Of a stretch of 64,000 nucleotides of DNA, positions 3,331-50,794 are shown piece by piece. This DNA is from Pristiophorus japonicus (lineage: Eukaryota), in assembly GCF_044704955.1 (NCBI RefSeq), contig NC_091999.1, positions 11,036,001-11,100,000 of the forward strand. Direction: 5' to 3'. Below the pieces are notes generated by a model. The model ran no database searches and was not told the DNA's origin. It saw nothing but the letters and a program-made list of their open reading frames with translations. Both the position numbers and the translations under genes were made by a program. Position 1 is the first letter of the stretch. Each line of letters opens with the position of its first letter.

Positions 3331-6300
3331 AACGGAGGGGTGTCGTAATATTAAATAAAGCAGCAATTACAACGGTGAGGAGGGGTCATATCTTAAAAGG
3401 ATCATCAAATGAGGCCATATGGGTTCAACGGAAAAAACAGGGGGCCAATCACACTGCTGGGTGTGTACTATAGACACCCAAATACAGTCAGAAGGAGTAG
3501 AAGAGCAAATATCGAGGCAAATTTCTGAGAAGTGCAAAAATAATAGGGCAGTTAGATTAGGGAATTTCAACTAGCCTCATATTAACTGGGATAGAATTAG
3601 TGTGAGATGTATAGAAGGAGCAGAATTCTTAAAAAGTATTCAAGAGAACTTTCAGCCGGTATGTAGCAAGCCCAACAAGAGGTGACGATCTGGATTAGTT
3701 TCAGGAAATAAAGCTGGGCAGTTGGAAGGGGTATCAGTGGGAGTGCATTTTGATGGTTGTGATTATAATCAGTTCGATTTAGGGAAGTTATGGAAAGGGA
3801 CAAAGATTGTCAAGAAATAAAAGTTTCCAATTGGAGAAAAGCCAACATAGCGAAGCTGAGATGTGATTTAGTTAAAGTGAAATGGACAAATCTACTTGAA
3901 GGTACATCAGTGTCAAAGCCGTGGGAGGCATTCAAGGAGGAGATAGTGAAAGTTCAGAATAAGTATTGTCCATTAAAGAAAAAGGGTGGGACAACAAATC
4001 TAGAGCCCCCTGGATGTCAAGGGGCATACAGGGTATGGAGAATGAAACAGTAATTTCAGAGACCATGGTCCAGAACTTAAAGAAGGGTAACTTTGAAGGT
4101 ATGAGGCGAGAATTGGCTAGGATAGATTGGCGAATGATACTTAGGGGGTTGACTGTGGATGGGCAATGGCAGACATTTAGAGACCGCATGGATGAAGTAC
4201 AACAATTGTACATTCCTGTCTGGCGTAAAAATAAAAAGGGGAAGGTGGCTCAACCGTGGCTATCTAGGGAAATCAGGGATAGTATTAAAGCCAAGGAAGT
4301 GGCATACAAATTGGCCAGAAATAGCAGCGAACCTGGGGACTGGGCGAAATTTAGAACTCAGCAGAGGAGGACAAAGGGTTTGATTAGGACAGGGAAAATG
4401 GAGTACGAGAAGAAGCTTGCAGGGAACATTAAGGCGGATTGCAAAAGTTTCTATAGGTATGTAAAGAGAAAAAGGTTGGTGAAGACAAACGTAGGTCCAC
4501 TGCAGTCAGAATCAGGGGAAGTCATAACGGGGAACAAGGAAATGGCGGACCAATTGAACAAGTACTTTGGTTCGGTATTCACTAAGGAGGATACAAACAA
4601 CCTTCCGGATATAAAAGGGGTCAGAGGGTCTAGTAAGGAGGGGGAACTGAGGGAAATCTTTATTAGTCGGGAAATTGTTTTGGGGAAATTGATGGGATTG
4701 AAGGCCGATAAATCCCCAGGGCCTGATGGATTGCATCCTAGAGTACTTAAGGAGGTGGCCTTGGAAATAGCGGATGCATTGACAGTCATTTTCCAACATT
4801 CCATTGACTCTGGATCAGTTCCTATGGAGTGGAGGGTAGCCAATGTAACCCCACTTTTTAAAAAAGGAGGGAGAGAGAAAACAGGGAATTATAGACCGGT
4901 CAGCCTGACCTCAGTAGTGGGTAAAATGATGGAATCAATTATCAAGGATGTCATAGCAGTGCATCTGGAAAATGGTGACATGATAGGTCCAAGTCAGCAT
5001 GGATTTGTGAAAGGGAAATCATGCTTGACAAATCTTCTGGAATTTTTTGAGGATGTTTCCAGTAAAGTGGACAAAGGAGAACCAGTTGATGTGGTATATT
5101 TGGACTTTCAGAAGGCTTTCGACAAGGTCCCACACAAGAGATTAATGTGCAAAGTTAAAGCACATGGGATTGGGGGTAGTGTGCTGATGTGGATTGAGAA
5201 CTGGTTGTCAGACAGGAAGCAAAGAGTAGGAGTAAACGGGTACTTTTCAGAATGGCAGGCAGTGACTAGTGGAGTGCCGCAAGGTTCTGTGCTGGGGCCC
5301 CAGCTGTTTACATTGTACATTAATGATTTAGACGAGGGGATTAAATGCAGTATCTCCAAATTTGCAGATGATACTAAGTTGGGTGGCAGTGTGAGCTGCG
5401 AGGAGGATGCTATTAGGCTGCAGAGTGACTTGGATAGGTTAGGTGAGTGGGCAAATGCATGGCAGATGAAGTATAATGTGGATAAATGTGAGGTTATCCA
5501 CTTTGGTGGTAAAAACAGAGAGACAGACTATTATCTGAATGGTGACAGATTAGGAAAAGGGAAGGTGCAACGAGACCTGGGTGTCATGGTACATCAGTCA
5601 TTGAAGGTTGGCATGCAGGTACAGCAGGCGGTTAAGAAAGCAAATGGCATGTTGGCCTTCATAGCGAGGGGATTTGAATACAGGGGCAGGGAGGTGTTGC
5701 TACAGTTGTACAGGGCCTTGGTGAGGCCACACCTGGAGTATTGTGTACAGTTTTGGTCTCCTAACTTGAGGAAGGACATTCTTGCTATTGAGGGAGTGCA
5801 GCGAAGGTTCACCAGACTGATTCCCGGGATGGCGGGACTGACCTATCAAGAAAGATTGGATCAACTGGGCTTGTATTCACTGGAGTTCAGAAGAATGAGA
5901 GGGGATCTCATAGAAACGTTTAAAATTCTGACGGGTTTAGACAGGTTAGATGCAGAAAGAATGTTCCCAATGTTGGGGAAGTCCAGAACCAGGGGTCACA
6001 GTCTGAGGATAAGGGGTAAGCCATTTAGGACCGAGATGAGGAGAAACTTCTTCACCCAGAGAGTGGTGAACCTGTGGAATTCTCTACCACAGAAAGTAGT
6101 TGAGGCCAATTCACTAAATATATTCAAAAGGGAGTTAGATGAAGTCCTTACTACTCGGGGGATCAAGGGTTATGGCGAGAAAGCAGGATGGGGGTACTGA
6201 AGTTTCATGTTCAGCCATGAACTCATTGAATGGCGGTGCAGGCTAGAAGGGCTGAATGGCCTACTCCTGCACCTATTTTCTATGTTTCTAAAAGGAACAA

Positions 6301-14875: not shown

Positions 14876-15649
14876 TCGACATGGACAAGTTGGAGCAGAT
14901 AGCGTTGATGCAATTAAGCGGATCTTGGAAAAGACATTATAAGAAAGGAATAGATGAACACGGGGTTCAGAGTAGGAAGAGGTAATTAGAGTGGGAGGAG
15001 CCTCGTATCAACACCAACATCGACTCGTTGCGTCGAGTGGCCTGTTCCTTTTGTGCAGATTCTGTACAATGTAAAACTCAGAGAAAACTCCGCCTGCAGC
15101 AAATAGGAGAGAATCATCCAATGGTCTGAAGGAATTGCAGTTTTCAGGGAATTTGAAGAGCCAGTTCCCGGCGAGTAACAGTAAAACCACTGCGGAAGCT
15201 GCACAGACTGAAACCAACCGACAACTGAGAGACTTTGAGACAAGTTCTCAGGCAGGCAAGAAAACCACAAATAACACAAAGTGAGCGACCCAGATGTAGA
15301 TATAAAATGAAACTAACTGTAAATAATTCAACTTAAATTTAAATGGTGTAATAGTTGCCCCATTGATGGAAGAAAAGTCAAACATCGTTCAAGGCAGGCA
15401 GGAGCTCCCGTTAAGAGTAAGGCTAGATTAAATACCTTGCCTTCGCCCCACAACATTTAAGTTTGGCTCAATCGATGCTGATGAACCACTCTGATTTTGT
15501 TTGAATCTTGCTGTGCTCATGACATGACACAGCCGTGTTCCTCTAGGTCAATCATCATTTTAAGATGATTGTATCAGTGAGGAGGAGAATTACAATGTTA
15601 CCTCAGGTTTATCTTGCACCAAGAAAAATCGAAAGATAAATTTAATAGC

Positions 15650-15890
15650 AATCATATCATCGGACAGCACAGAAGGAGGTCATTCGACCCAGTATGTATA
15701 TGCCGGTTCGTGAAGGTGGTGTCACTTGGTCCCTGCCCTTTGCTCTTTTCTCATACCCCTTCAAATGTTTTCTTTTCCAGTATTGATCCAATTCTACTTT
15801 GAAAGCTACAGTTGAATATGCTTCCAGCACCTTTTCAGGCAGTGCATTCCTGTTCATAACAACTCGTCGTTTAAAAAACTTTCTCAACTC
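15650..15890 (-). mobile_element. CR1 3' fragment
   Basis: ORF 15657-15887 RKFFKRRVVMNRNALPEKV matches the CR1 ORF2 C-terminus. Confidence 0.75.
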
Positions 15891-16048
15891 CCCCTCTTAT
15901 TCTTTCGACATTGACTGCGAATACATTTGCAACAGGCTTCAAATGAAAATAGCATTAACGTGAGAGGCAGAACTTTTCCTGTGACTGACCACTGTCCCTG
16001 GGTAAACAGCAGCCAAATAAATTACATTCTTCCATTTTTATCCTCCAG

Positions 16049-16354
16049 CTTCCAGTTCCACAGTGTCCCAGAGTCCGCCTCTACAAACCTCTACTGTCGG
16101 TGACACCATTACTTTAAGCTGTGAATATGCAGGTGCCTGTCAGCACACAGTGCACTGGTACTGTCAGTCCCCAGGGCAGGGTCCGAAATACCTGCTTCAG
16201 AGACACACTTCAGGAGAGGGAAATAAAGAAAACACTGCCGGTGGCCGAATTTCTGCTTCGGTCGATCCTGTAGAGAAAATCAGCCGGTTAAACATCGCAA
16301 AACTTCAACTAAGTGACAGCGCTGTGTATTACTGTGCACTGGGTCGGCGCACAG
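16049..16354 (+). CDS. Leaderless 'supporting' TCR-delta V segment of NAR-TCR
   Basis: Polypyrimidine acceptor ...TCCTCCAG at 16048, phase 1, matching the J donor; open V ASSSTVSQSPPLQTSTVGDTITLSCEYAGACQHTVHWYCQSPGQGPKYLL...LQLSDSAVYYCALGRR; extra Cys in CDR1; no leader exon seen upstream. Confidence 0.9.
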
Positions 16355-16393
16355 CACAGTGATAAACAGTACGGAGAGAGCCATACAAAAATC
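16355..16393 (+). other. 23-RSS of the supporting V
   Basis: CACAGTG + 23 nt + ACAAAAATC. Confidence 0.95.
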
Positions 16394-16808
16394 TGATCAT
16401 GGTCGGGATTACAGATACGCAGTCATACAGAACAAGGAAAGAGCAGTATTAAAGCTGATTATGGTGGATATTACATGCACATAGGGACACAAAGCACGGG
16501 TAGAGTTCGAAAGCCTGGACAGAGTGGGGCTTACAGACACACAGTGATTCAGAGCAGGGAGAGAGCCGTACAAAAACCTGATGTTGGTGGGGAAACAGAT
16601 ACGCAGTCATAGCGAGCATGGAGAGAGTCATACTAATATCTGAATATTGTGGGGATTACAGGCACACTATGACACAGAGCACGATGGAGTACAAAAAGCT
16701 GGACATTGTCGGGATTACAGACACAGAGTGCTGCAGAGCAGAGAGAGATCCGCACTAAAACCTGTTCATGGTGGGTATTACAGTTATGCACTGAATCAGT
16801 GCAGAGGG

Positions 16809-16960
16809 AACATGAGAACATAAGAAGTAGGAGCAGTAGTAGGAAATACAACCCCTCGAGCCTGCTCAGCCATTTAATACAATCATGGCTGATCCGATCA
16901 TGGACTCAGGTCCACTTCGCTGCTCGGTCCCCACAATCCCTTATTCCCTTATCTGTTAAG
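16809..16960 (-). mobile_element. CR1 3'-tail fragment inserted in the RSS array
   Basis: AACATAAGAA..AGGAGCAG..CCCCTCGAGCCTGCTC..CCATT..AATCATGGCTGAT, same as other CR1 tails in the window. Confidence 0.8.
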
Positions 16961-19044
16961 AGCAAGGAGAGGGAGGGAGTGGGAGTGCAATGAGAGGGAG
17001 AGAGCAGCGGAGAGGAAGTGGAGCGGGAGAGCACGGGGGAGAGCAAAGGCAGGGGGAGACCTGGAGCGGGGACGTGGAGAGCCAGGGGAGGTGGAGAGCA
17101 GGGGGAATGGACAGCAGGGAGAGTCGTACGAAAACCGGAAAAATGTTGTGGATTACAGACACACATTGATAAAGAGCACCGAGCGAGTTCAACAACCTAC
17201 ACATAGTGGGGATTACAGACACACAGTGATACAGTGCACCGAGAGAGTTCACAAAGCTGGACGTGGTGGAGATCACAGGCACAGCGATGCAGAGCACGGA
17301 GGCAGCTGTTGAAAAACCTAATCATGGTGGAAAGAGCGATGAGTTCCTGCATATTTTAGGGATCTCGGAAGGAGATTAAGAAGTATCACCTCAAAGGTAA
17401 TTATCTCCAGATTACTCACGGTGCCACGAGCTTGTGCATATAGCAAAAGTAGGAAAGAGCAGAGCAATGCCTGGCTGGAGAGATCGTTCAAGAGGGACGG
17501 CTTTAGATTCCTGCTACATTGGAACCCGCTCCAGGGGATGTGGGACCAGTAAAGGCAGGAAGGTTTGCACCTCAACTTCCCGGTCAAATATTCCGCAGCT
17601 GGGGGGTGGGGGTTGCACGTTCTGTTGGAAAGCTTTAAAATAATTTTGCAGACGGTTGGGCACCATAATGTACCATTAGATGAAAGAATACAGATAGCAC
17701 TAGAGTAAGAAATATTAAGTTATTGGGTGGTAGTCAGACGAAGAGAGAATACAAGGATATTTATTAGCGATAAACGCAAAATTCTTGGTTAATCAGGTTG
17801 GTGAGCAGCAGGTGGAAATAGCCACATGCGAATATGATGTTGTGGCGATAGCGGCTGACAGAAATGCAGGATTGGGTATTAATTAGTCCTAGATATAGGT
17901 GTTAAGGAATGGGAGGGAAAGAAAGGAGTTGGGTTGGCAGTATTAGTTAAGGAGAATGTTACAGTGCTGGAGGGAGGCTATGTACTGGATGGGTGAAGCA
18001 TAGACTCTCTTTGGTTAGATATAAGAAATAATAGAGCTGCAATTGCACAACTGGGTGTTTTCTACAGGCCACCAAATAGTGGGAAGGATATAGATGGGGG
18101 CATTTGCAGGTAAATTACAGAGAACAACAAGAACTACAGAGCAGTGACAACGGAGGCCTTGAACTATGCTAATATAGTCTGGGATAATAATAGCATAAAG
18201 AGCAGAGAGGGGAAAGAATTTCATTGTGTGTTGAGGAGAACTTTCTTGAGCAGATGTACTCGAGGTGGAAGACTTCAACGTCCATCAAAAAGATTGGCTC
18301 GGTAGCAACACTATTGGCCGAGCTGGCCGAATCTTGAGGACATAGCTAACAGACTGGGTCTGTGCGAGGTGGTAAGTGAGACAACACGAGAAGAAATAAC
18401 TACTTGACCTCGTCTTCGTCAATCCACCCGTCGCAGATGCATCTCTCCATGACAGCTCTGGCAGCAGTGGTCACCGCAAAGTCATTGTGGTGACGGGATC
18501 CCATCTTCACACTAACGACATCCGCTACCGTGTTGTTTGGCACTATCAACGGGCTAGATGGGATAGGTTCAGAACAGGTCGAGCAGCTCAAAACTGAGTA
18601 TCCATGACGCAGCAGCAGAATTGTATTCCACCACAATCTGTAACCTAATGGCCCGGCATATCTCTCAATCTACCAATACCATTAAGCGAGGGGACCAATC
18701 CTGGTTCAGAGTTGCCTGTAGAAGAGCATGCCAGAAGCAGCACCAGGTGTATGTAAAAATGAGGTGCCATCGTTGGGAAGCTGCAAAACAAACTACATGC
18801 ACCCTAAAACGTGGAAGCAGGATGCCATAGACAAGGTTAAGCGATCTCACAAACAGAGAATAAGATCAAATCTCTGCAGTCCTGCTGCATCCTGTCGTGA
18901 ATGTTGGTGGAGCATCAAACAACTAACGGGAGATGGTGGTTCCATGAGTATCCCCATCAGAAAAGATGGCAGACCCAGCACGTCAGTGCAAAAGACCAGG
19001 CTGCAGCGTTTGCAATCATCTTCAGCGAAAAGTGCCAAATGGAT

Positions 19045-22000
19045 AGAAATATAGAAACATAGAAACATAGAAAATAGGTGCAGGTGTAGGCCATTCGGCC
19101 CTTCGAGCCTGCACCGCCATTCAATGAGTTCATGGCTGACCATGCAACATCAGTACCCCATTCCTGCTTTCTCGCCATACACCTTGATCCTCCTAGTAGT
19201 AAGGACTACATCTAACTCCTTTTTGAATATATGTAGTGAATTGACCTCAACAACTTTCTGTGGTAGAGAATTCCACAGGTTCACCATTCTCTGGGTGAAG
19301 AAGTTTCTCCTCATCTTGGTCCTAAATGGCTTACCCAACATCCTTAGACTGTGACCCCTGGTTGTGGACTTCCCCAACATTGGGAACATTCTTCCTGCAT
19401 CTACCCGATCCAAACCCGTCAGACTTTTAAACGTTTTTATGAGATCCCCTCTCAATCTTGTGAACTCCAGTGAATACAAGCCCAGTTGATCCAGTCTTTC
19501 TTGATTTGTCAGTCCCACCATCCCGGGTATCAGCCTGGTGAACCTTCGCTGCACTCCCTCAACAGCAAGAATGTCCTTCCTCAAGTTAGCAGACCAAAAC
19601 TGTACACAATACTCCAGGTGTGGCCTCACCAAGGCCCTGTACAACTGCAGTAACACCTCCCTGCCCCTGTACTCAAATTCCCTCGCTATGAAGGCCAACA
19701 TGCCAGTTGCTTTCTTAACCGCCTGCTGTACCTGCATGCAAACCTTCAATGACTGATGTACCATGACACCCAGGTCTCGTTGCACCTCTCCTTTTCCTCA
19801 TCTGTCACCATTCAGATAATAGTCTGTCACTCTGTTTTTACCACCAAAGTGGATAACCTCACATTTATCCACATTATACTTCATCTGCCATTCATTTGCC
19901 CACTCACCTAACCGATCCAAGTCACTCTGCAGCCTCATAGCATCCTCCTCGCAGCTCACACTGCCACCCAGCTTAGTGTCATCCGCAAATTTGGAGATAC
20001 TACATTTAAGCCCCTCGTCCAAATCATTAATGTACAATGTAAACAGCTGGGGCCCCAGCAAAGGACCTTGCGGTACCTCACGAGTCACTGCCTGCCATTC
20101 TAAAAAGTACCGATTTACTCCGACTCTTTGCTTCCTGCATGCCAACCAGTTCTAAATCCACTTCAGCACACGATACCCAATCCCATGTGGTTTAACTTTG
20201 CACATTACTCTCTTGTGTGGAACCTTGTCGAAAGCCGTCTGAAAGTCCAAATACACCACATCAACTGGTTCTCCCTTGTCCACTCTACTGGAAACATCCT
20301 CAAAAAATTCCAGAAGATTTGTCAAGCATGATTTCCCTTTCACAAATCCATGCTAACTTGGACCTATCATGTCACGTCTTTCCAAATGCGCTGCTATGAC
20401 ATCCTTAAGTAATGATTTGATCATTTTACCTACTACCGATGTCAGGCTGACCGGTCTATATTTCCCTGTTTTCTTTCTTCCTCCTTTTTTAAAACGTGGG
20501 GTTACATTGGCGGCCCTCCACTCCCTAGGAACTGATCCAGAGTCTATGGAATGTTGGAAAATGACTGTCAATGCATTCGCTATTTCCAAGGCCACCTCCT
20601 CAAGTATTCTGGGAAGCTGACCATCAGGCCTTGGGGATTGATAGGCCTTCAATCCCATCAATTTCCCCAACAAAACTTCCTGACTAATAAGGATTTCCGT
20701 CAGTTCCTCCTACTTACTCGACCCTCTGACCCCTTTCATATCCGGAAGGTTGTTTGTGTTCTCCTTAGTGAATACCGAACCAAAGTACTTGTTCAATTGG
20801 TGTGCCATTTCTTTTTTCCCCGTTATGACTTCCCCTGATTCTGACTGCAGGGGCCTACGTTTGTCTTTATTAACCTGTTTCTCTTTACATATCTGTAGAA
20901 GCTTTTGCAGTCCGTCTTAATGTTCCCTGCAAGCTTCCTCTCGTAAGCTATTTGCCCTGCCCTAATCAAACCCTTTGTCCTCATCTGCTGAGTTCTAAAT
21001 TTCTCGCAGTCCCCGGGTTCGCTGCTATTTCTGGCCAATTTGTATGCCACTTCCTTGGCTTTAAACCCTGATTTCTCTTGATAGCCACAGTTGAGCCACC
21101 TTCCCTTTTTTATTTTTACGCCAGAGAGGGATGTACAATTGTTGTAGTTCATCCATGCAGTCTCTAAATCCCTGCCATTGCTCATCCACTGTCAATCCCT
21201 TAAGTATCATTCGCCAAACTATCCGAGCCAATTCACGCCTCATACCTTCAAAGTTACCCTCCTTTAAGTTCTGGGCCATGGTCTCTGAATTAACTGTTTC
21301 ATTCTCCTTCCTCATGTAAAATTCCACCATATTATGGTCACTCTTCCCCAAGGAGCCTCGCACAACGAGGTTGCTAATTAATCCTCTCTCATTACACAAC
21401 ATCCAATCTAAGATGGCCTCCCCCCTTGTTGGTTCCTCGACATATTGGTCCAGAAAACCATCCCTTATGCATTCCAGGAAATCCTCCTCCACCGTATTGC
21501 TTCCAGTTTGGTTAGCCCAATCTGTATGCATATTAAAGTCACCCATGATAACTGCTGCAACTTTATTGCATGCACCCCTAATTTCCTGTTTGATGACCTC
21601 CCCAACATCACTACTACTATTTAGACGTCTGTACACAACTCCCACTCACGTTTTTTGCCCTTTGGTGTTCTGCAGCTCTACCCATATAGATTCCACATCA
21701 TCCAAGCTAATGTCCTTCCTAACTATTGCATTCATCTCCTGTTTAACCAGCAATGCTACCCCACCTCCTTTTCCTTTTATTCTATCCTTCCTGAATGTTG
21801 AATACACTTGGATGTTGCGTTGCCAGACCTGATCATCCTGGAGCCATGTCTCTGTCATGCCAATCACATCATAACTGTTACCAACTACTTGCACAGTTAA
21901 ATCATCCACCTTATTACGGATACTCCTTGCATTAAGACACAAAGCCTTCAGGCTTGATTTTTTAACACCCTTTGTCCTTCTGAATTATGATGCAGTATGG

Positions 22001-24036
22001 CACTTTTTATTTCTTGCCTTTATTTACTCGGCCATCCACTATTGCTTTTTACCTTTCTACCATCTGTTTCCGACTCCATATTAGGTTCCCATCCCCCTGC
22101 CATATAAGTTTAAACACTCCCGAACTGCATTAGCAAATGTTACCCCCAGGATATCAGTTCCAGTCCTGCCCAAGTGCAGACCGTTACTTTTGTACAGGTC
22201 CCACTTCCCCCAGATTTGGTTCCAATATCCCAGGAATTTGAATCCTTCCCTCTTGCACCACTGCTCAAGCCACGTATTTATTCTAACTATCCTGCTTGCT
22301 CTACTCTGATTATCACGTGGCACTGATAGCAATCCAGAGATTACTACTTTTGTTATCCTACTTTTTAATTTAACTCCGAGCTCCCTAAATTCAGCTTGTA
22401 GGATCTATTCTCGCTTCTTACCTATAACGTTGGTACCAACATGTACCACGACAACTGGCTGTTCACCCTCCTCTCCAGAATGCTCTGCAGTCGCTCCGAG
22501 ACATCCTGGACCCTTGCACCAGGGAGGCAACATTTAATTCTGGCGTTCTGGTTGTGGCTGCAGAACTTCCTCCTATTCCCCTTACAATAGAGTCCCCTAT
22601 CACTATAGCTCTCCCACTCTTCTTCCCGCACTTCTGTGCAGCAGAGCCACCCATGGTGCCATCAACCTGGCTGCTGGTGCCTTCCCCTGGTAAGTCATCT
22701 CCCCCAACTTATCCAAAATGGTATATCTGTTTTGGAGGGAGATGACTGCAGTGGACTCCTGCACTATCTTCCTGCTCTTGCCTTGGCTCTTGGTCACCCA
22801 TTCACTATCTGTCCTCACCCTTACATGCGGTGTGACCAACTCACTAAATGTGCTATCCACAACATTCTCAGCATTGTGCATGCTCCAAAGTGAGTTCATC
22901 CGCAGCTCCAATGCTGTCATGCAGTCTGTCAGGAGCTGCAGCTTGACACACTTCCCGCACACATAGGATTCAGGGACACTGGAAGTGTACCTGCCTTCCC
23001 ACATGGCAGAGGAGGTGCATGACATGGGTCCGAGCACTCCTGCCATGACTTAACCCTTAAATTAATTTACTTACTAAAATGTATTTAAACACCAAACAGC
23101 TAATTAGTAGTTCACATCCAATTGAACCAATCTAAAAGTCAGTCAAAAAGAAAGTTATACTTACCAGACATACAGTCAACCACTTACCAGCTTGGCTCTG
23201 ACGTCACCTCTCGATTTCGCACCCTTCTATCTTTGTCTGCAGCTGGTTGGGCTGGTCTCTGGGCCTCCGTCTCTTACTCTTGCACTCCTTATCAGCTGCT
23301 CTAGTGTCAGCACTGGTAGGAAAAACAAGACAAAACAGCACCTACCAACCCCAGTAGCCCGAACTCACCCACTTACCAAACTCACGAATGCCACTCTTTG
23401 CTGTTGAACTCCGTTCTCTGCACGAGCTGCCTCTTTTTAAACTGTATCTATGTCAGATGACTCGCTACTGGTCAGTTGTTTACAGACCTGGTTTTAACTA
23501 GCTGCTAATTGCCTCCTATTGGAGAGTTACCCTGATTTACTTTGCCTAAACCTTAAATATTCCCAACTATTTAACTTTACCCCTTTGAATTAAACTGCTA
23601 CTTACTTAGAAGCTACTGGCAATTGCCACTAACAATTTACTGCAGCCTCCAAATTGTTTAAAGAGAATAACCCTTAAAACTCACCCACTTACCAAACTCA
23701 CGAATGCCACTCTTTGCTGCTGCTCTCCGTGCTCTTCACAAGCTGCCACTTTTTAAACGGTATCTATGTCAGATGACTCGCTACTGGTCAGTTGTTTACA
23801 GAACTGGTTTTAACTAGTTGCTAATTGCCTCCTACTGGAGAGTTACCTTGTTTTACTATGCCTAAACCTGAAAGATTCCCAACTATTTAACTTTTCCCCT
23901 TTAAACTAAACTGCTACTTACTTAGAAGCTACTTGCAATTGCCACTCACAATTCACTCCAGCCTCCAAATGGTTTGAAGAGAATTACTCTTAAAACTCAC
24001 CCACTTACCAAACTCACGAATGCCACTCTTTGCTGC
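19045..24036 (-). mobile_element. Full-length CR1 LINE (5' tandem monomers, ORF1, ORF2, (TTTCTATG)n tail), inactivated by stops/frameshifts
   Basis: ORF1 Cys-rich N-terminus (22603-23046) and esterase motif VIGDSIVRG; ORF2 pieces 21942 to 19150 with CLNARSI, GDFN, FADD. Confidence 0.93.
23363..24036. repeat. 316-bp tandem repeat (~2.1 copies) at the CR1 5' end
   Basis: ACTCACCCACTTACCAAACTCACGAATGCCACTCTTTGCTG recurs at 23363, 23679 and 23995. Confidence 0.92.
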
Positions 24037-25489
24037 TGATCCATATCGGCCTGAGGTCACCACCATCACAGAAGCCAGTTTTCATCCAAGTGATCTCAAG
24101 AAAAGGCTGAGCTCTCTGGATACTGCAAAGGTTAGCGGTTCCGACAACATCCTCGTTGTCGTCCTGAAGATTTGTGATCCAGAACTAGCTGCGCCTCTTG
24201 TAGAGCTTCTCTGATATACCTACAACATTGTGGAAAAGTGCCGAGGTATGTCGAGTCCACATAAAGCAGGACAAATCCAATCCGTCCAATTCCCAGCCCA
24301 GCAGTCTATTCTCAATCATCACCAAAATGATGGAAGGTATTATTAACAATGCTATCAAATGGCAATTACCCACCAATAACCTTCTCAAAGATGCCCAGTT
24401 TGGGTTCCACAAGGACCACTCGGCTCCAGACATCATTACAGCCTTGGTCGAAATATCGACAAAAGAGCTGAATTCCAGAGACAAGAAGAGAATGAAAGCC
24501 CCTGATATGAAGGCAGCATTTGACTTAGTGTGACATTAAGGAGCCCAAGGAAACGAAAATCAATGGAAATCGGAGGGGTGCTCTACCCTGGCTGGAGACA
24601 TTTTCAGCAAAATAAAGATGGTTATGGTGGTTGGAGGACAATCACCACAGCCCCAGGATATCACTGCAGGGGTTGCTCAGGGCAGCATCCTCGGCTTAAC
24701 CTTCTTTAGCTACTTCATCGAAGATCTTCCCTCCATGATAAGTTCAGAATTGTGGAGTGTGGATATTTGCTGATGACTACACAGTGTTGAGTGCCATCGC
24801 AACTCCTCAGAAAGTGCAGCAGTCCTTGCCCAATTGCAGCACAACCTGGATGACATTCAGGCTTGGGCTGATAAGTGAAAAGCAATATTTGCGCCACATA
24901 AGTGCCTGTAAATGACAATCTGGAACAAGCGAGGGTACAGCCAGAACCGAATGAACGTCCTGAGGATCACCATTGACCGAAAACCTAACTGGACCAACCA
25001 TATAAATAACGCTCACAACAAGTGAAGGTCAGAGGCGGGGTAATGTGTGGCGACTGCACCACCTCCTGACTCCCAAAGGCACTTCCACCATCTGCAAGGC
25101 GCAAATCAGAAGCGTGATGGAATACTCCACATATTCCTGAAAGAGTGCAGGTCCAACAACATTCAATAAGTTCGATACCATCCAAGAGAAAACAGCACGC
25201 CTGATTGGCAGCCCATCCGCCACCTTAAACATTTGGTCCCTGCACAACCGGTGCACCATGGCTGCACTGTGCACCATCTGCAATGTGCACTTCAACAACT
25301 CGCCAAGGCCTCTTCGGCAGCACAACCGAAACCCGTGAATTTAACACCTAGAATTTGAAGGGCAGTCGGAAATTCCCTTCCAAGTTACACATCATCCTGA
25401 TTTGGAAGTATATCGCCGTTACTTCACCATCACTGGATCAAAACACTGGAAATCCCTCCTTAATAGTACCATCACCACACAAGCTGATG

Positions 25490-27172
25490 TGGTATAACCT
25501 TCCGGAAATACTAGGGGACCGAGTGTCTAGCGAGAAAGAGGAATTGAAGGAAATCGTTATTAGTCTGGAAATTTTGTTAGGGAATTTGATGGGATTAAAG
25601 GCTGGTAAATCCCCAGCGCCTGATAGTCTGCATCCCAGAGTATTTAAGGAAGTGGCCCTAGAAATAGTGGATGCATTGGTCGTCATTTTCCAACATTCTA
25701 TAGATTCTGGATCAGTTCCTATGGATTGGAGAGTAGCTAATTTTACCCCAATTTTTAAAATGGAGGGAGAGAGAAAAGAGGGATATATAGACCGGTTAGC
25801 CTGACATCTGTCGTGGGGAAAATGTTGGAATCAATTATTAAAGATAAAATAGCAGCGCATTTCGAAAGCAGTGTCAAGATCGGTCCAAGTTAGCATGGAA
25901 TTATGAAGGGGAAATAATGCTTGACAAATCTTCTAGAATTTTTTGAAGATGTAACTAGTAGAGTGGAGAAGGGAGAACCAGTGGATATGGTCTATTTGTA
26001 CATTCAAAAGGCTTTTGACAAGGTCCCACACAAGAGATTAGTGTGCAAAATTAAATCACATGGTATTGGGAGTAATGTATTGACGTGGATAGAGAACTGG
26101 AAGCAAAGAGTAGGAAAAAACGGGTCTTTTTCAGAATGGCAGTGAGTGACTAGTGGGGTACCGCAAGGTTCAATGCTGGGATCCGAGCTATTTACAATAT
26201 ACATTAATGATTTAGACGAATAATTGAAGGTAATATCTCCAAGATTGCAGATGACACTAAACTGGGTGGTAGTGTGAGCTATGCGGGGGATGCTAAGAGG
26301 CTGCAGGCTGAATTGGACAGGTTAGTTGAGTGTGCAAATGCATGGCAGATGCAGTATAATGTAGATCAATGTGAGGTTATCCACTTTGGTGGCAAAAACA
26401 GGAAGGCAGATTATTATCTGAATGGTGACAGATTAGGAAAAGGGGAAATGCAACGAGACCTGAGTGTCATGGTACATCGGTCATTGAAAGTTGGCATGCA
26501 TGTACAGCAGGCGGTAAAGAAGGCATGTTGACCTTCATAGCGACAGGATTTGAGTATAGGATCAGGGAGGGCTTACTGCAGTTGTTCAGGGCCTTGCTGA
26601 GGCCACACCTTGAATATTGTGTACAGTTTACGTCTCATAATCTGAGGAAAGACATTCTTGCTATTGTTGGAGTACAGCGAAGTTTCACCAGACTGATTCC
26701 AGCGATGGCAGGACTGACATATGAAGAAAGACTGGATCGACTAGGCTTACATTCACTGGAACTTAGAAGAACGAGAGGGGATCTCACAGACACATATACA
26801 ATTCTGAAGGGATTGGACATGTTAGATGCAGCAAAAATGTTCCCGAATTTGGTGAAGGCAAGAACCAGGGGTTATAGTAGAAGGATAAGGGGCAAGCCAA
26901 TTAGGACCGAAATGAGGAGAAACTTCTTCACTCAGAGAATTCTGAACCTGTGGAAGTCTCTACCACAGAAAGTTGCTGGGGCCAGTTCATTAGATATATT
27001 CAAAAGGGATTTAGATGTGGTCCTGACGGCTAAAGTGATCAAGAATAATAGAGAGAAAGCAGGAATGGGACAGTAAAGATGCATGATCAACCATGCTCAT
27101 ATTGCATGGTGGTGCAAGCTCAAAGAGCCGAATGGTCTACTCCTGCACCGATTTTCTATGTTTCTATGTTTC
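25490..27172 (+). mobile_element. 5'-truncated CR1, degraded
   Basis: ORF fragments 25355-27076 match CR1 RT; tail TTCTATGTTTCTATGTTTCTA. Confidence 0.9.
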
Positions 27173-29599
27173 TACGTTTCAAGATGGCGGCTCACCACCA
27201 TTGTCTCAAGGGCAATTAGGGATGGGCAATAAATGCCGGCATTGCCAGCGACGCCCACATCCCAAGACGAGTAAATCTACTACGTTTCCACCCCATGAGG
27301 AAAGAAGCATTACTCTATCTGGTTCTGGCGAATTGGTGGGCTAAGTGACCAAAGTCTCAGTCGGGGAAAATTTAGGTAACTGTGAACATCGTATCATAAA
27401 TTTGAGATTCGCTCTGGAAACGGACAGGGAGCAATCTAGTCTAAAGTACTTAATTTGAGGAAGGCCAATTTTAGTTGGCTGAGAGCCGATCTGGCCCCAA
27501 TAAATTTAAATCAAAATTGGCTGCCAAAACTGCATTCAAACTCTAGGTTGGCTTTAAAGTTGAGGTGGTTCGGTACAGTCGAGGAACATTCCCATGAGAG
27601 AGAAAGTTAGGACAACTAAAAGCACCATTCCCTGGATGATGAAAGCGATAGAGAGTAAGTTCAAGCAGAAAAAGAGCGTGTATCAGGTTGAGAATACAAG
27701 GGAGAATCAGGCTGAATACAGAAAGTTCAGAGAGGAAGTGAAAAAGAAAATGAGAGGAGGAAAGAGTGAAAATGAGAATTGGTTGGCAGATAAAATAAAC
27801 GGGAATTCAAAAGTCTTCAATAGGTGTACAAATAGCAAATGGATAGTAAGCAGAGGGGTGGGGCCCATTCGTGACCATGGATGCAGAAGCTATGGCTGAG
27901 TTACTAAAGGTGTACACTGCATCGGTCTTTATCAAGGAAGTAGCTGCTGCCCAAGTTGTCGTGAAAGAGCACGTAGTGGAGATACTGGTTGGGATAACAT
28001 TTGATCAAAAGGAGGTACGAGAAAGACTGGCTCTATTAATGTAGATATGTCACCAGGACCGGATGGGATGTATCCTTGGTGGCTGAGGAAAGCAAAACTG
28101 CAATTTGCTGATATATTGGCTATAATCCTCCAATCCTTTATGGACAGGTGGTGGTGCCAGAGGACAGAAGAACTGCAAACGTTGCACCATTGATCAAAAA
28201 ATGTTGTAAGGATAAACCCAGTAACTACAGGCCAGTCAGTTTAACTTCGGTAATGGTGAAGCATTGCGAAACGATAATCAGGGACAACATTAACAGTCAC
28301 TTGGACAAACGTGGATTAATTAACGAAAGGCAGCACAGATTTGTTAATGGGATCTCGTGTTTAACTAACTTGGTTGCGTTCTTTGATGAGGTAACATAGA
28401 GGGTTGATGAAGATAATGCGTTGATGTTTTGTACATGGAATTCAGAAAATGCGTTTGAGAAAGCGCCATGTCATAGACATGCCAGCAAAATTGAAGCCCA
28501 TCGAACAAAAGTGAAAGTGGCATCATGGATACGAAATTCACTTAGTGACAGGAAACAGAATAGAGGTGAATAGTTGCGTTCCAGAATGCAGGAAGGTAAA
28601 GAGTTTTGTTCCCCAGGGATCGGCACTCAGACCACTGCTATTCTAGTTATATATTGGTGAAATAGACTTGGGTGTGCAGGGAACCATTTCAAAACATGTA
28701 GATGAAGCAAAACCTAGAAGTGTACCGAACAGTGAGGAAGAAAGTGATGAACTTCAAGAGGACACAGGCAGGCTGGTGAAATGGGCGGACACGCGCAGTT
28801 GAAATTTAATGCAGATAAGTGTGAAGTGCTGCATTTTGGGAGAAGGAACGAGCAATGGTGCAATTCTAAAGGGCATGCATGAATAGAGAGACGTCGCAAT
28901 ATATCTGCAGAAATCGATGAAGCTGGCAGGGTAGCTTGCGAAAGCATTTAACAGAGCATACGTGATCCTCGGCCTCATAAATAGAGGCATAGACTACAGA
29001 GCCAAGCAAGCTTTGATGAACCTTTATAAAACACTGGTCCGTTCTGAATTGGTGTACTGTGTCCAATTCCGGGCTGCAAACATTAGGAAGGATGTGAAGA
29101 CGTAGAGAGGGTGCAGACAAGATATACAAGAATAATTCCAGGGTTAACGGACTTAAGTTACGTGCATAGAACCGCAGGTTGTTCTCCTTCGAGCACCAAC
29201 GTTTGAGAGGAGATTTGATAGAGCTGTCCAAAATCATGAGACGTGAAGCTGGAGAGAAAGTGTTATCATTGGTGAAAGGTAAGAGAACCAGACGACACAG
29301 ATTAAGGTAATTGGCATCAGAATAAAAGGTGACATGGGAAAATATATTTTTAAAGCGAGTGGTTAGGATCTGGAATGCTCTGCCTTGTCGGATGGTAGAA
29401 GCACATTCAATCGTGGCTTTCAAAATGGAGTCGAATAACTGGTGAAGCGAAAGTTTTGCAGGGCTGCGGAGAAAAGGCAGGGAAGTGGAATTAGCTGGAG
29501 TGCTGTTGCAGACAGCGAGCAAGGACTCGACTGGACGAATGGCCTCCTTCAATGCTGTAACTCTTGTATGATTCAATGATTATTATTATTATTATTATT

Positions 29600-31840
29600 T
29601 AAATGGCGAGAGATCAATGCTGATGTACAGTGGGACCTGGTGTCGTTGTGCATGAAACACAAACATTTAGTATGCAATTACAGCAAATAATCAGGAAGGC
29701 AAATGGAATGTTGGCCTTTATTGCAAGAGGGATGGAGTATGAATGCAGTGTATCCTGCTTCAACTGTATCGGGTATCGGTGAGACCACACCTAGAGTACT
29801 GCGCATAGTTTTGGTCTTATATAAGGAGGGATATAATTGCACTGGAGGCACTTCAGGGAAGGTTCACTAGCTTGATTCGTGAGATGAAGAACGGTTGAGC
29901 AGGTTTGGCCTTTACTCATTGGAGTTTAGAAGACTTTGGTGGCAAAAACCCGAAGGCAGAATATTATCTGAATAGCGGCAGATTAGGAAAAGTGGAGGTG
30001 CAACGAGACCTGGGTGTCATGGCACATCAGTCATTGAAAGTTGGCATGCAGGTACAGCAGGCGGTGAAGACGGCAAATGGCATGTTGGCATTCATAGCGA
30101 GGGGATTTGAGTACAGCGGCAGGGAAGTCTTACTACAATTGTACAGGGCCATGGTGAGGCCTCACCTGGAATATTGTGTTCAGTTTTTGTCCACGAATCT
30201 GATGAAGGTCGTTCTTGCTATTGAGGGAGTGCAGCGAAGGTTCACCAGACTGATTCGCGGGATGGCAGGACTGACATAGGAGGAGAGACTGGATAGACTG
30301 GGCCTGTATTCACTGGAGTTTAGAAGAATGAGAGGGGATCTCATAGAAACATATAAAATACTGACGGGATTGGACAGGCTAGATGCAGGAAGAATGTTCC
30401 CGAGGTTGGGGAAGTTCTGAACCAGGAGACACCGTCTAAGGATAAGGGGTAAGCCATTTAGGACCGGGATGAGGAGAAACGTCTTCACTCAGAGAGTTGC
30501 TAACCTGTGGAATCCTCTACCACAGAGATTTGTTGATGCCAGTTCGTTGGCTATATATGTATATGAGTTCGATATGGCCCTTAAGGCTAAAGGGATCAAG
30601 GGGTATGGAGAGTAAGCAGGAAAGGGGTACTGAGGTGTGATCAGCGATCATCTTATTAAATGGTGAGGCAGGCTCAAGGGGCCAAATGGCCTACTCCTGC
30701 TCCTATTTTTTATGTTCTTATTTTCTTATGATTTGCGAGAGAAACACAGCAAGTTGACGTGACATTGGACGATGAGATTATAAATGAGTTAAATGCACTT
30801 AAAAAAGAAAGAGGGTAACTGTGAAATAAACTATTCAAACTCAAATTGAATAAAACTTCTCATTCAGATGGATTACATCCGCGCATTTTAAAATGAACTA
30901 GAGAAGAGCTCGCAGAGGCATTACTACACATAATAATAATTCGTTAGAACAATGTGTTGTGCCAGAGGACTTTCGTATAGCTGATTGATATGTCTATATT
31001 CAGCTTGAGATAAAACATGTCCAGTGAAGTACAGACCCGTCAGCTTAGCATTAATCATAGGAAAAATTTTGGAATTGTTAATAAAGGAGAAAATAGAAGA
31101 ACATCTATTCTATGATTAATCTATGATCTATGAAACCAAAAATATACTGTGGAATATCAGCATGGATCCCTAAAAAGCTAAAGTCTTGATTGACCAATCT
31201 CATTCAATTTTTTGAACAAGGAACAGAGAGGAAGGACAAAACTAAAGTAGTATAAGTAATTAATCTAGATTTTCAAAAGGCCTTCGATAAGGTACCACGT
31301 AATAAACTAATGAATAAATTCATAACATCTGGAATCAGCGACAACTAGCAGAATGGATACCGAGCTTAACTCAAGACTGAAAGCAGAGAGTAAGCGTGAA
31401 TGGAAGCAATCCAAAGTGGCATATTATGGTAAGTGGTGGTCCACAATGGTTATGCTGGGACCACTGATGTTCACAATTTATATTAACTATTTAGAATTTG
31501 TAATTATAAACATAATTTCGAAATTTGCAGAGGTTATCAAAATGGGAGGAATATTTAACAATGAGGAGGACTGCAACAACTTCGAAAAAAAGTAAATAAA
31601 GTTGAAGAATGGGCATATACTTGGCAAATGTAAGTCAACACAGATAAATATGCGGCTTTGCATTTTGTTCAGAAAAAAATCTCCGAGTACAAATACACAA
31701 ATCACTAAAAGTAGTGACAAAGCCAAAACAAAGCAAACTAAGCAGTCGGGTTTATTTCGAGAGTAATTGAATTGAGAAGTCGGGAAGCTATGCTAACCTT
31801 ATATCTCAGCTGTTACACCAGACATGTAGTGCTGTGCCTT
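29600..31840 (+). mobile_element. Cluster of CR1 fragments (29600-29930, 29932-30730, 30735-31840)
   Basis: ORF 29905-30279 and 31353-31595 similarity to CR1 ORF2; 3' tail at ~30720. Confidence 0.8.
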
Positions 31841-34800
31841 CTTCTTAGGCAGTCCCTCGGATTCGAGGAAGATTCGCTTCCACACTAATATGAGTTCTCA
31901 GGTGACTGATGAATCCAATGCGGGACCTACAGTTTCTGCCACACGTGGGGCAGAACGTGGTTGGAGGGATCGGTGGGTGCAATGCTTGGCTTGCCGTGCA
32001 CGACTTCCGCTTTGCACTCGGCTTCCATGTACTCCCGACGAAGAGACTCGAGATGTTTGGCACCTTCGCGGATTCTTCTTCCTCACTTTGAGCAGTCTTG
32101 GGCTAATGATTCCCAGGTGTCAGTGGGGATGTTGCACGTTTTCAAGGAGGCTTTGAGGCTGTCTTTGAAGCGTTTCCTCTGCCCACCTGTGACTCACTTG
32201 CCGTTTCGGAGCTCTGAGTAGACTGCTTGCATTGGGTTCAAGAATCAGGAAAGCTGACGAACTGGCCCGTCCATCAGAGCTGACCGAGTGTGGTCAATGC
32301 TTCGATGCTGGGGATGTTGGCCTGAGTGAGAGCACTGGTGTTGATACACCTGCAAAGGATTTGCAGGATCTTGCAGAGGAAGCGTTGCTGGATCTTCTCT
32401 AGTGCTTTGAGATGCCTGTTGTACATAGTCCATGTCTCTGAAGAATATAGGATGGCGGGTCTCACTACTGCTCTGCAGTCCATGAGCTTGCTGCCGGGTT
32501 TGAGGTCCTGGTCGCCAAACATTATCTTGCTCAGGCGGCTGAAAGCTGCACTGGCACAGCGAAGGCGGTGTTGGACTTCATTGTCGACGTCTGCCCTTGT
32601 TCACAGCAGGCTCCAGATGTATGGAAAGTGGTCCACATTGGCCACGGCCCCGTCATGTATATTGATAATCCACAGAAATACTTTGTGGTTGGGCAGGCGG
32701 GTAGAGGATATTTGTCTGATGAATATTTAGTGCAATGCGCATAATCTGTATGCTTCAGTGAAGGTGTTGACAATGGTTTGGAGGTCGACCTCCGAGTGTG
32801 CGCAAACGCAAACATCAATGACTGAGGATGGGACGACCTCGGAGCTGGACTCGAGGCAACGGAGCTTGAATAATTTCCAGTTTGTTCTGTAGATAAGCTC
32901 CACTCCTGCGGGGAGCTCATTGAGGTTGAGATGGAACTTTGCAGCAAGGAAGATCAAGAAGAGCGTTGGTGCAATGACACAGAGTTGCTTGATCCTGGTC
33001 CGTACGTGAATTGGGTCTGTGGTGGATCCATTGGCCAGGATGATGGCTTGCATGTCATCGTGGTGTAGATGGAGGAGGTGTCAAAGTTTTGAGGGGAACC
33101 TGAGGAGGAAAATCCATAATCTTTTATGGTTGACAGTTCTGAAGGGCTTTGTGAGGTCAAAGAATGCCATATACAGGGCTTGGTGCTGATCTCTGCATCC
33201 TTCTTGAATTAGAAGAGCTGTGATGATCATGTCCATTTTACCCATTAATGGATGGAATCCACATTGCGACTCTGGGAGGAGTTCTTCAGCTACTTTGAGA
33301 TGGTGATTGAGGAGGATTATTGCGATGACTTTCCCTGTGGCAGAGAGCAGGGACACTCCTCTGTAATTACTGCAATCGGACTGAACACCTTTCTTGAAGA
33401 TGGTCACGATTACGGCATCTCTGAGATCTCCTAGCATGCTCTCCTCCTTCCAAATAAGACAAACGAGTTCTTGGATTCGCACCAATTGTGCTTCTTCACC
33501 ACGCTTTAGTGCTTTGATGGGGTTTCCATCTGCTCCTGAGGTTTTGTTGTTCTTCAGATATCGGATGACTTTTGAACCGGATGCCAGGCACGGCTTGTGC
33601 TGAAGTGCTAGTGGGTGGCACGCTGTGGGATGGACTCGAGGACAAACATGTCAAAGACAGAATCTCGCTGAAGGAGATCTTTGAAGTGCTCTTTCCAGCG
33701 GGCACTGACTGCCTCTCTGTACTTGATGTGCAACTACTCGGCCTTGCCCTGCATTGGGGTATAATCTTGGGTACATGGGCCATAGGTGGTCTTGACTGCA
33801 CTAACGAATCCTCGCACGATCTCCTGAAAATTCTACACCCAGCACCTGTTCTTTAGGTCACGAGTTTCACGTTGGACCTCGGCCGGCAGACGACTATAGA
33901 GCTGGTTTCTTGCACACGAGTTGTATTGCTGTTTCCTGTTCAGGAATGTCTGGTGCAAATTAGCTCCTGGATGTGCTGATCGTTCTCGTCCAACCAGTCT
34001 TAATGTTTCCTGGTCGAGTGACCAAGCGTTTCTTCACATGTGCTAATTATGGAGGCCTTCAGGGCAGACCAGGCAATGTGGTCACTCTGCGTCTCTGGAT
34101 CACTGGGAATCGTCACTTTGGATGGGAGGCGCTGGATGAATAGAGGTTTCTTCGAAGGGTCTTTGAGTGCTCCAGCGATGATTTTCGAGAGGCATCATTT
34201 CTGCTGCCGCCGCCTCTTTGGGGCTAGAGTGATGGAAATGGCAGAGTGGATTAGGCGGTGGTCCATCCAGCAGTCATCAGCTCCTGTCATGGTGCGGCAG
34301 ATGCGGACGTCTTATTGGTCCCTTGCTCAGATTATTACATAACTTAGCAGATGCCAGTGTTTGGAGCGAGCATATTGCAATGAGGCCTTTACTTGTTTCT
34401 ATCATGGCCCAAGGTGTTGGTTAAGACAAGGCCATGTTCTAAGCATTTCTTCAGCAGGTTTGAGTTGGTTTTCCATAACCCCTCTCTCCCAATTCGAGCT
34501 CCACAGAGTTATGTTTCCTTTCCAACTCTGGCGTTGCATTCGCCAAGGAGGATCAGCTTGTGGCCCGTTGGGATTCTTGTCAGGAATTGTTCAAGGCTGC
34601 AGCAGAATTCCTCTATGAACTCGTCTGTAGGGGCATATGCACTGATGAATGTAACGCATTGGTACTGAGCTAGGTTGAGTCGAAGGGTCATGAGGCGTTA
34701 CTTTATCCTGCAAAGGGAGTATCTAAGGACGCCCAACTAGCTCATTTTTATGGTGAAGCCTAGCCCATTGGGGATGCAAAAACCTCTGAGTGCCACGGCA

Positions 34801-35030: not shown

Positions 35031-35119
35031 CATTCAAACACACACACACATACTTCGAGTCTCTTCCTTCCTCCTTGCCACGAGCCCTCTCTGCCTGGGT
35101 TTCACAGGATGCAGTGTCG

Positions 35120-50790: not shown

Positions 50791-50794
50791 TTAA

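What the first reader, a model, noticed from the sequence alone, without database searches (positions are those of the whole stretch)
16355..17330. Minisatellite built from the V(D)J recombination signal: ~12 tandem 23-RSS units behind the NAR-TCR supporting V
Seen: the V's own RSS is unit 1 of a 59-63-bp tandem repeat whose unit is heptamer + ~23 spacer + nonamer + ~24-bp linker. Heptamer positions read CACAGTG 16355, CGCAGTC 16418, CATAGGG 16480, CACAGTG 16540, CGCAGTC 16602, CACTATG 16665, CAGAGTG 16724 and TGCACTG 16787. After a CR1/G-rich interruption come a partial unit, then CACATTG 17162, CACAGTG 17222 and CACAGCG 17280. Units 1-3 and 4-6 form a 185-bp higher-order repeat, and the array predates the CR1 insertion. 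Established: V segments normally carry one RSS, RAG1 binds nonamers, and cleavage needs CAC. Inference: the array could be a RAG loading platform or a set of decoys that tunes how often or when this leaderless V rearranges relative to the NAR VDJ. It could equally be neutral slippage. I know of no description of such an array, but cannot check the literature.
Basis: partly seen in the sequence, partly recalled or inferred. Interest (0 to 1): 0.85.

Follow-up and report, generated by a model that had tools for sequence, protein, structure and literature searches.

The report
RSS-derived minisatellite behind shark V-delta
The recombination signal behind a shark T-cell-receptor V gene has been copied head to tail about a dozen times into a decaying minisatellite; one extra copy is still a perfect signal, but the array as a whole shows no sign of having been kept for a function.

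Summary
The leaderless NAR-TCR supporting V-delta exon (16048-16354) ends at a 23-RSS (16355). That RSS is unit 1 of a 59-63-bp tandem array: units 1-7 plus a stub at 16355-16809, then units 9-12 at 17103-17335. Three units make a 184-bp higher-order period. A 5'-truncated CR1-like LINE tail and a G-rich microsatellite split the array.

The array consensus is a perfect RSS (CACAGTG, 23 nt, ACAAAAACC) plus a 24-nt linker. Heptamer and nonamer columns decay as fast as spacer and linker (20.8% against 23.2% mismatches, p=0.64). Five of eleven heptamer positions have lost CAC. Only unit 1 and unit 4 (16540, perfect, the best RSS in the window) score like real V RSSs. One perfect survivor is expected by chance in about 19% of cases.

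Contig depth shows the unit is low copy, not a genome-wide repeat. Colinear paralogous contigs about 15% diverged carry the array and the LINE/G-rich block, so both predate the cassette duplications.

This scan already noted the same kind of array at three other supporting V-deltas in this genome (s1-876490, s1-878610, s1-878787).

Best reading: a neutral minisatellite seeded by the RSS. Unit 4 is a plausible but untested competing RAG target. Three conventional Vs in the window and 48 V segments from other vertebrates have none.

The parts
16048..16354 (+). Leaderless NAR-TCR supporting V-delta exon, with its splice acceptor AG at 16046-16047 and an extra CDR1 cysteine (EYAGACQ)
   Evidence: Open frame of 102 aa. 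Pfam V-set E=9.7e-15. A 71% identical V with the same CDR1 Cys is in the public protein set (P0001). The NAR V, D and J with their RSSs lie at 8848, 9241 and 9621, and a GTAAGT donor follows the J.
16355..16393 (+). Unit 1 signal: the V's own 23-RSS (CACAGTG, 23 nt, ACAAAAATC)
   Evidence: PWM score 22.5, rank 4 of 127,918 positions in the window.
16355..16786 (+). Array block 1: units 1-7 (59-63 bp each), with a 184-185-bp higher-order repeat (u1-3, u4-6, u7-)
   Evidence: TRF period 184, 2.4 copies, 77% matches, score 488. Unit identity: u1/u4 82%, u4/u7 79%, u2/u5 74%, u3/u6 69%.
16540..16578 (+). Unit 4 signal: a perfect-consensus orphan 23-RSS (CACAGTG, 23 nt, ACAAAAACC) in the same orientation as the V's RSS, 185 bp downstream
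   Evidence: PWM score 28.0, rank 1 of 127,918 positions, equal to the best of 17 distinct real V 23-RSSs used for training.
16787..16809 (+). Unit 8 stub (TGCACTG plus the first ~16 nt of spacer), cut by the LINE insertion
   Evidence: Alignment A1.
16808..16960 (-). 5'-truncated CR1-like LINE 3' tail, with the 8-bp tail repeat GAACATAA at 16808-16826
   Evidence: It matches 50786-50635, 30725-30639 and 6286-6211 (the last just 3' of the RT ORF 3966-6200) in reverse orientation. RVT_1 E=1.4e-33. TRF finds the 8-bp repeat. Summed contig depth is 3e4 to 2.8e6.
16961..17119 (.). G-rich 11/16/17-bp microsatellite, possibly expanded from the spacer motif GAGCAGGGAGAGAG (inference)
   Evidence: TRF rows 16966-17029, 17064-17103 and 17064-17119. 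It shares GAGCAGGG with the unit spacer.
17103..17161 (+). Unit 9, partial: no heptamer, nonamer ACGAAAACC, full linker
   Evidence: Alignment A1.
17162..17335 (+). Array block 2: units 10-12. Units 10 and 11 have 20-nt spacers. Unit 12 is CACAGCG, 23 nt, TGAAAAACC (weak)
   Evidence: PWM scores are 8.0, 10.6 and 15.6, all below the 22.1 minimum of real V RSSs.

Best explanation
This is a neutral minisatellite seeded by the 23-RSS of the supporting V-delta. A 62-bp segment, made of the 39-bp RSS and about 24 bp of downstream flank, was duplicated in tandem by replication slippage or unequal exchange. It grew to at least 11 units and was partly re-amplified as a 3-unit (184-bp) block. A CR1-like LINE tail then hit it, and a G-rich microsatellite expanded beside the insertion. 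All of this happened before the NAR-TCR cassette was copied along the locus, so sister cassettes inherited the array. Only unit 1 is kept by selection, as the V's working RSS. The other units drift, and most can no longer be cut by RAG because CAC is lost or the spacer is 19-20 nt. Unit 4 happens still to be a perfect 23-RSS in the productive orientation. By inference from mouse work on RSS strength and RAG scanning, it should compete with unit 1. Such joints would be V + 185 bp + D joins and non-productive, because an in-frame TGA falls in the heptamer at 16360-16362. What is shown: the anatomy, the uniform decay, the low copy number, and the inheritance by paralogues. What is inferred: the slippage mechanism and RAG use of unit 4.
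For: Array and consensus. Uniform decay: mean column identity is 0.84 for the heptamer, 0.77 for the spacer, 0.78 for the nonamer and 0.79 for the linker, permutation p=0.34. Mismatches to consensus are 20.8% in signal columns and 23.2% elsewhere, Fisher p=0.64. The shared dead heptamer CGCAGTC in u2 and u5 shows that dead units were copied. The chance of at least one perfect unit among 9 non-V units at the observed divergence is 0.19. Low copy: array bins have summed contig depth 9-70, like the V exon (33-95), against 10^3 to 10^6 in neighbouring TE bins. Paralogous contigs are colinear across V 3' half + u1-3 (60/383 differences), V end + u1-4 (49/318), LINE/G-rich + u10-12, and G-rich + block 2 + downstream flank (93/628). 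Their divergence is like that of the flanks (11-14%) and the V exon (9-13%). Joints show unit-number differences among copies (16590>16804, 17140>17207). The array is specific to this V type: three conventional Vs in the window have single RSSs, and 0 of 48 V segments from other vertebrates have an array.
Against: Unit 4 has 0/16 signal mismatches where about 2.4 are expected (P=0.076 for that unit alone). Unchecked scan notes say that two sister arrays also keep one extra good or perfect RSS. If that is the same unit in each, drift alone becomes less likely. I could not read the sister arrays or any other species, so selection on unit 4 is not excluded. The per-column test has low power (10 full units, related through the higher-order repeat).
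Confidence: 0.75

Rival explanations
1. Selected decoy or throttle. Unit 4, perhaps with unit 12, is kept as a second and stronger 23-RSS. RAG arriving from the downstream D/J side meets it before the V's own RSS. This diverts part of the rearrangements into non-productive joints and so tunes how often or when the supporting V rearranges relative to the NAR V-D-J.
For: Unit 4 is the top-scoring RSS of the whole window, in the correct orientation and 185 bp from the V. It has 0/16 signal mismatches against 7/47 elsewhere in the unit. Scan notes report an extra good RSS in two sister arrays (unchecked). In mouse, RSS quality sets V usage (PMC7478721), and scanning RAG uses convergent RSSs, including cryptic ones (PMC11153149; 10.1101/2020.06.30.181222).
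Against: There is no excess conservation of signal columns across the array. A perfect survivor is expected by chance in about 1 case in 5. Array divergence between paralogues equals that of the flanks. No junction or expression data exist: the only other runs of the species hold TE pieces only.
Confidence: 0.13
2. RAG loading platform. The many nonamers recruit RAG1 to the V and raise its rearrangement frequency.
For: Nine of the units keep an A-rich nonamer-like block.
Against: The nonamers decay like the linker. By established knowledge from mouse, RAG accumulates at H3K4me3-marked D/J recombination centres and not at V segments. Binding without cleavage at dead heptamers has no known positive role.
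Confidence: 0.04
3. The units belong to a genome-wide repeat or a TE-borne satellite (for example one with RSS-like ends) that only resembles an RSS and landed next to the V.
For: TE fragments lie in and around the array. An unrelated 62-bp-period repeat sits next to another copy of the same LINE tail at 50794-51091.
Against: Contig depth over the array equals single or low-copy flanks and is 100 to 100,000 times below the TE bins. Unit 1 is the V's own working RSS, in register. There is no similarity to the 50794 repeat (score 22 against 18.4±2.2 for shuffles). There is no other copy in the 64-kb window.
Confidence: 0.03
4. Assembly artefact: a mis-assembled or over-expanded repeat.
For: No single short-read contig spans the whole array. 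The runs that hold it come from one sample, probably the assembly's own source.
Against: The units are only 58-82% alike, too diverged to collapse or over-expand. 59-72% of sampled 31-mers are present in the runs. A 294-nt contig covers 16551-16800 with one difference. Diverged paralogous contigs show the same layout.
Confidence: 0.03

Closest known systems
Minisatellites (tandem repeats of 10-100-bp units with higher-order structure)
   Same: Head-to-tail 59-63-bp units, a 3-unit higher-order period, unit-number differences among copies, uniform drift, and interruption by a LINE.
   Different: The seed sequence is a working V(D)J recombination signal, and the first unit is still in use. I found no description of such an array in the paper library.
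Cryptic or orphan RSSs and competing RSSs in mammalian antigen-receptor loci, scored by RIC (PMC2193808); RSS quality controlling V usage (PMC7478721); RAG scanning of convergent RSSs (PMC11153149)
   Same: Unit 4 has a full consensus heptamer, a 23-nt spacer and a consensus nonamer. It lies in the orientation a scanning RAG would use, and no coding segment is attached.
   Different: Known cryptic RSSs are usually weak chance matches. This one is a perfect copy derived by duplication of the neighbouring real RSS. Its use by RAG is untested.
NAR-TCR double-V cassette of sharks (Criscitiello et al. 2006, cited in PMC12227049; the paper itself is not held in the library)
   Same: An L-V-D-J NAR part with a splice donor, then a leaderless V-delta with an extra CDR1 cysteine and a 23-RSS.
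   Different: The descriptions I could read do not mention a tandem RSS array behind the supporting V.

Membership tests
Minisatellite | Head-to-tail copies of a 10-100-bp unit, detectable above chance | tested here: met
   TRF score 488, period 184 with a 62-bp sub-period. 12-unit alignment with 72% mean column identity.
Minisatellite | Unit number varies between copies or alleles | tested here: inconclusive
   Paralogous contigs skip 66, 213 and about 202 nt, which are whole-unit multiples (tables 5 and 5c). Short contigs in a repeat can also be laid in a shifted register.
Functional 23-RSS (RAG target): unit 4 | Heptamer starting CAC, spacer 23±1, A-rich nonamer | tested here: met
   CACAGTG, 23 nt, ACAAAAACC. 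PWM built from 17 distinct real V RSSs: score 28.0, rank 1 in the window.
Functional 23-RSS (RAG target): unit 4 | Adjoins a usable coding segment | tested here: not met
   The flank is units 1-3. The V frame meets TGA at 16360-16362.
Functional 23-RSS (RAG target): unit 4 | Cleaved by RAG in lymphocytes | not testable with these tools
   No thymus DNA or RNA run holds the stretch.
Functional 23-RSS: units 2, 3, 5-12 | CAC plus a 23±1 spacer plus an A-rich nonamer | tested here: not met
   u2, u3, u5, u7 and u8 lack CAC. u9 has no heptamer. u6, u10 and u11 have 19-20-nt spacers. u12 scores 15.6, below the 22.1 minimum of real RSSs.
Selected cis-element array (decoy or platform) | Signal positions conserved above neighbouring positions | tested here: not met
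   20.8% against 23.2% mismatches, p=0.64. Permutation p=0.34.
Selected cis-element array (decoy or platform) | Present at related V genes and in other species | tested here: inconclusive
   Present in paralogues of the same genome (notes), but inherited together with a LINE insertion.
Interspersed repeat or TE-borne satellite | Many dispersed copies in the genome | tested here: not met
   Depth 9-70 over the array against 10^3 to 10^6 over TE bins.

The most novel reading that the evidence does not exclude
The second perfect 23-RSS (unit 4) is held by selection in several NAR-TCR cassettes as a built-in competitor of the supporting V's own RSS. It would be a germline-encoded brake that lowers or delays productive supporting-V rearrangement in this doubly rearranging receptor, and a natural test of RSS competition under RAG scanning.
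Probability: 0.12. Interest if true: 0.7.

Novelty: new variant of a known kind. Interest (0 to 1): 0.38.

Why it matters
As it stands this is a curiosity: a working recombination signal can seed a minisatellite and be carried along through cassette duplications. The value lies in unit 4. A perfect orphan 23-RSS sits 185 bp behind a real one in the same orientation, repeated in sister cassettes. That gives a natural substrate for asking how RAG chooses between neighbouring signals in a shark, and whether such competition costs productive NAR-TCR rearrangements. Annotators of shark TCR loci should also expect several RSS-like hits behind these V genes and should not call extra gene segments from them.

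Tried and rejected
1. Linker derived from the V's 3' coding end. Local alignment of the linker consensus and of each unit's linker against the last 45 nt of the V is no better than shuffles or random windows (consensus p about 0.5; two of ten units nominally p=0.01-0.04, not robust). Rejected, so the unit is the RSS plus downstream flank.

2. Relation to the 62-bp-period repeat at 50794-51091 beside another copy of the same LINE tail. No similarity.

3. Other copies of the array or of this V in the window. None.

4. Cross-species and paralogue retrieval.
- The search for homologous proteins gave only one close V (P0001, 71% identical), and it is cut before its RSS.
- The search for related loci on metagenome contigs returned 55 V segments of 26-42% identity, plus one 18-residue match at 89%, from unknown vertebrate hosts. 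The one I read, L054, looks teleost-like, and I took none for human. I used them only for a mechanical count of arrays (0 of 48) and to train a heptamer/nonamer matrix.

5. True RIC scoring. The published models are not available offline. The matrix from 17 distinct real V RSSs is a stand-in that ignores spacer sequence.

6. Expression or rearrangement. Runs X5 and X6 of the same species hold only TE pieces, so they give no information.

8. Literature. No paper in the held library describes tandem RSS arrays. PMC1458790 and PMC7909615 are not held.

Full report
**What is there**

The window holds a NAR-TCR cassette.
- A NAR-type V (V-set) ends at an RSS at 8848.
- A D-like element has an RSS at 9241.
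- A J has its RSS at 9621 and a GTAAGT donor.
- About 6.4 kb on lies a leaderless V-delta exon at 16048-16354. It starts at a splice acceptor and carries the extra CDR1 cysteine (V-set E=9.7e-15).

The V exon ends at CACAGTG, 23 nt, ACAAAAATC (16355-16393).

**The array is real**

- TRF calls 16355-16790 a repeat of period 184 (2.4 copies, 77% matches, score 488).
- Self-BLAST links 17103-17335 to the same family.
- Aligning the 12 units gives the consensus CACAGTG + 23 nt + ACAAAAACC + a 24-nt linker. This is a textbook 23-RSS plus a linker.
- Unit identities show the 3-unit higher-order repeat: u1/u4 82%, u4/u7 79%, u2/u5 74%, u3/u6 69%.

**The interruption**

- 16808-16960 is the 3' tail of a LINE family in reverse orientation. 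It matches the sequence just 3' of a reverse-transcriptase ORF at 3966-6200 and several other copies.
- It ends in an 8-bp tail repeat.
- It is among the most abundant sequences in the genome's contigs.
- 16961-17119 is a G-rich 11/16/17-bp microsatellite that shares GAGCAGGG with the unit spacer. Its origin from the spacer is an inference.
- Array units lie on both sides, so the array is older than the insertion.

**Is it a genome-wide repeat or an artefact?**

I laid Logan contigs of four runs on 15500-18000 at 80% likeness.
- Array bins have summed depth 9-70, like the V exon (33-95) and the unique flanks. TE bins reach 10^3 to 2.8x10^6. The unit is therefore low copy.
- A 294-nt contig covers 16551-16800 with one difference.
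- 59-72% of sampled words are present in the runs.
- These runs come from one sample, probably the assembly's own, so this is consistency and not independent proof.
- The units are 58-82% alike, too diverged for repeat collapse or over-expansion.

**Paralogues**

The same lay shows diverged contigs that are colinear with:
- the V 3' half plus u1-3 (60 differences in 383);
- the V end plus u1-4 (49 in 318);
- the LINE/G-rich stretch plus u10-12 (one 353-nt contig);
- the G-rich stretch plus block 2 plus the downstream flank (93 in 628).

So sister copies in this genome carry the array and at least the inner (5') end of the LINE fragment with the G-rich block. Their divergence (about 15%) is like that of the flanks (11-14%) and the V exon (9-13%).

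Higher-order copies are 77% alike, which is more diverged than the paralogues. This gives the order: unit expansion, block duplication, LINE insertion, cassette duplication.

Several joints differ by whole units, which suggests changes in unit number. Register shifts of short contigs could mimic this.

This agrees with earlier notes of this scan. They place RSS arrays behind supporting V-deltas about 189, 539 and 837 kb upstream of this window (s1-876490, s1-878610, s1-878787). Two of these were followed up, with the same verdict as mine. I could not read those sequences.

**Specificity**

- Three conventional V segments in the window (59663-59902 on the + strand; 61242-61529 and 62873-63157 on the - strand) have no high-scoring tandem array in the window-wide TRF run.
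- For the two minus-strand Vs I read a single RSS with no RSS-derived array.
- Of 48 V segments with at least 300 bp of downstream flank, from vertebrate host contigs in metagenomes, none has a tandem array at its RSS. Their hosts are unknown. The one I read (L054) looks teleost-like, and I took none for human.

**Selection test**

- Mean column identity is 0.84 for the heptamer, 0.77 for the spacer, 0.78 for the nonamer and 0.79 for the linker. The permutation test gives p=0.34.
- Excluding unit 1, signal columns differ from the consensus at 30/144 positions and other columns at 98/423 (Fisher p=0.64).
- CAC is lost in u2, u3, u5, u7 and u8.
- u2 and u5 share the dead heptamer CGCAGTC, so a dead unit was copied with the block.
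- u6, u10 and u11 have 19-20-nt spacers.

I built a heptamer/nonamer matrix from 17 distinct real V 23-RSSs, whose own scores run from 22.1 to 28.0.

| Unit | Score | Rank among 127,918 window positions | Note |
|---|---|---|---|
| u4 | 28.0 | 1 | perfect consensus |
| u1 | 22.5 | 4 | the V's own RSS |
| u7 | 17.7 | 7 | no CAC |
| u12 | 15.6 | 8 | below the range of real RSSs |
| other units | 10.6 or less | | |

Given each unit's own non-signal divergence, the chance that at least one of nine non-V units stays perfect is 0.19. For u4 alone it is 0.076. The array as a whole drifts, and u4's perfection is unremarkable on this window's evidence.

**Mechanism**

Shown:
- The unit is the RSS plus about 24 nt that are not derived from the V's coding end.
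- The copies are direct and not inverted.
- Decay is uniform.
- Sister copies inherited the array.

Inferred:
- The array arose by slippage or unequal exchange.
- RAG-made signal joints would be head-to-head, not tandem, so a RAG origin is unlikely.

Also inferred, from mouse work on RSS strength (PMC7478721) and on scanning RAG using convergent RSSs (PMC11153149; 10.1101/2020.06.30.181222):
- u4 should be a competent target, met before u1 by RAG coming from a downstream D/J centre.
- A join at u4 would keep 185 bp of array behind the V and would be non-productive, because TGA falls at 16360-16362 in the V frame.
- Whether this happens, and whether it matters, is untested.

**Literature**

Full-text searches for tandem, multiple or duplicated RSS, for RSS with minisatellite, and for NAR-TCR found no description of such an array. 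The original NAR-TCR paper and a 2021 locus paper are not held. "Not described" is therefore provisional.

**Limits**

- No other shark genome could be reached.
- No RNA or thymus data hold the stretch.

**Verdict**

The functional reading of the whole array is not supported, and neutral slippage is supported. The open question is unit 4 as a competing RSS.

Noticed in passing
window 50794-51091: Another minisatellite with a 59-62-bp period (4.2 copies, 70% matches) starts right after the 3' tail repeat of another copy of the same LINE family (50635-50790). It is unrelated in sequence to the RSS array.
   Followed up: partly
window 16673-16708: Inside unit 6 a 4-nt deletion creates CACAGAG, 11 nt, ACAAAAAGC. 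This is a 12-RSS-like motif with an 11-nt spacer, in the same orientation as the 23-RSSs of units 1 and 4.
   Followed up: no
window 59663-59902 (+), 61242-61529 (-), 62873-63157 (-): Three further V-set segments (27-40% identical to the supporting V), each with one 23-RSS-like signal (59897 +, 61239 -, 62867 -). Two of them are on the opposite strand to the NAR-TCR cassette, so they would need inversional joining if D/J lie downstream.
   Followed up: partly
window 1-20050, 20051-37707, 37708-about 56000: Three diverged (70-92%) tandem copies of a 17.6-20-kb, TE-rich segment. Only the first holds the NAR-TCR cassette parts; the V and the array have no counterpart in the other two.
   Followed up: partly
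window 62274-62581 (- strand reading): Two short tandem repeats (35-bp and 31/62-bp periods) lie 250-600 bp behind the V at 62873-63157. They are not RSS-derived, although one unit gives a chance CACAGTG, 22 nt, ACAAAGGGC match at 62359.
   Followed up: partly
P0001 (public protein set, 1,197-nt contig, JGI/ENA): A 71% identical supporting-V-like ORF with the same CDR1 cysteine and the same acceptor-side residues (ASSS). It is cut at the contig end before its RSS, and its source organism was not determined.
   Followed up: partly
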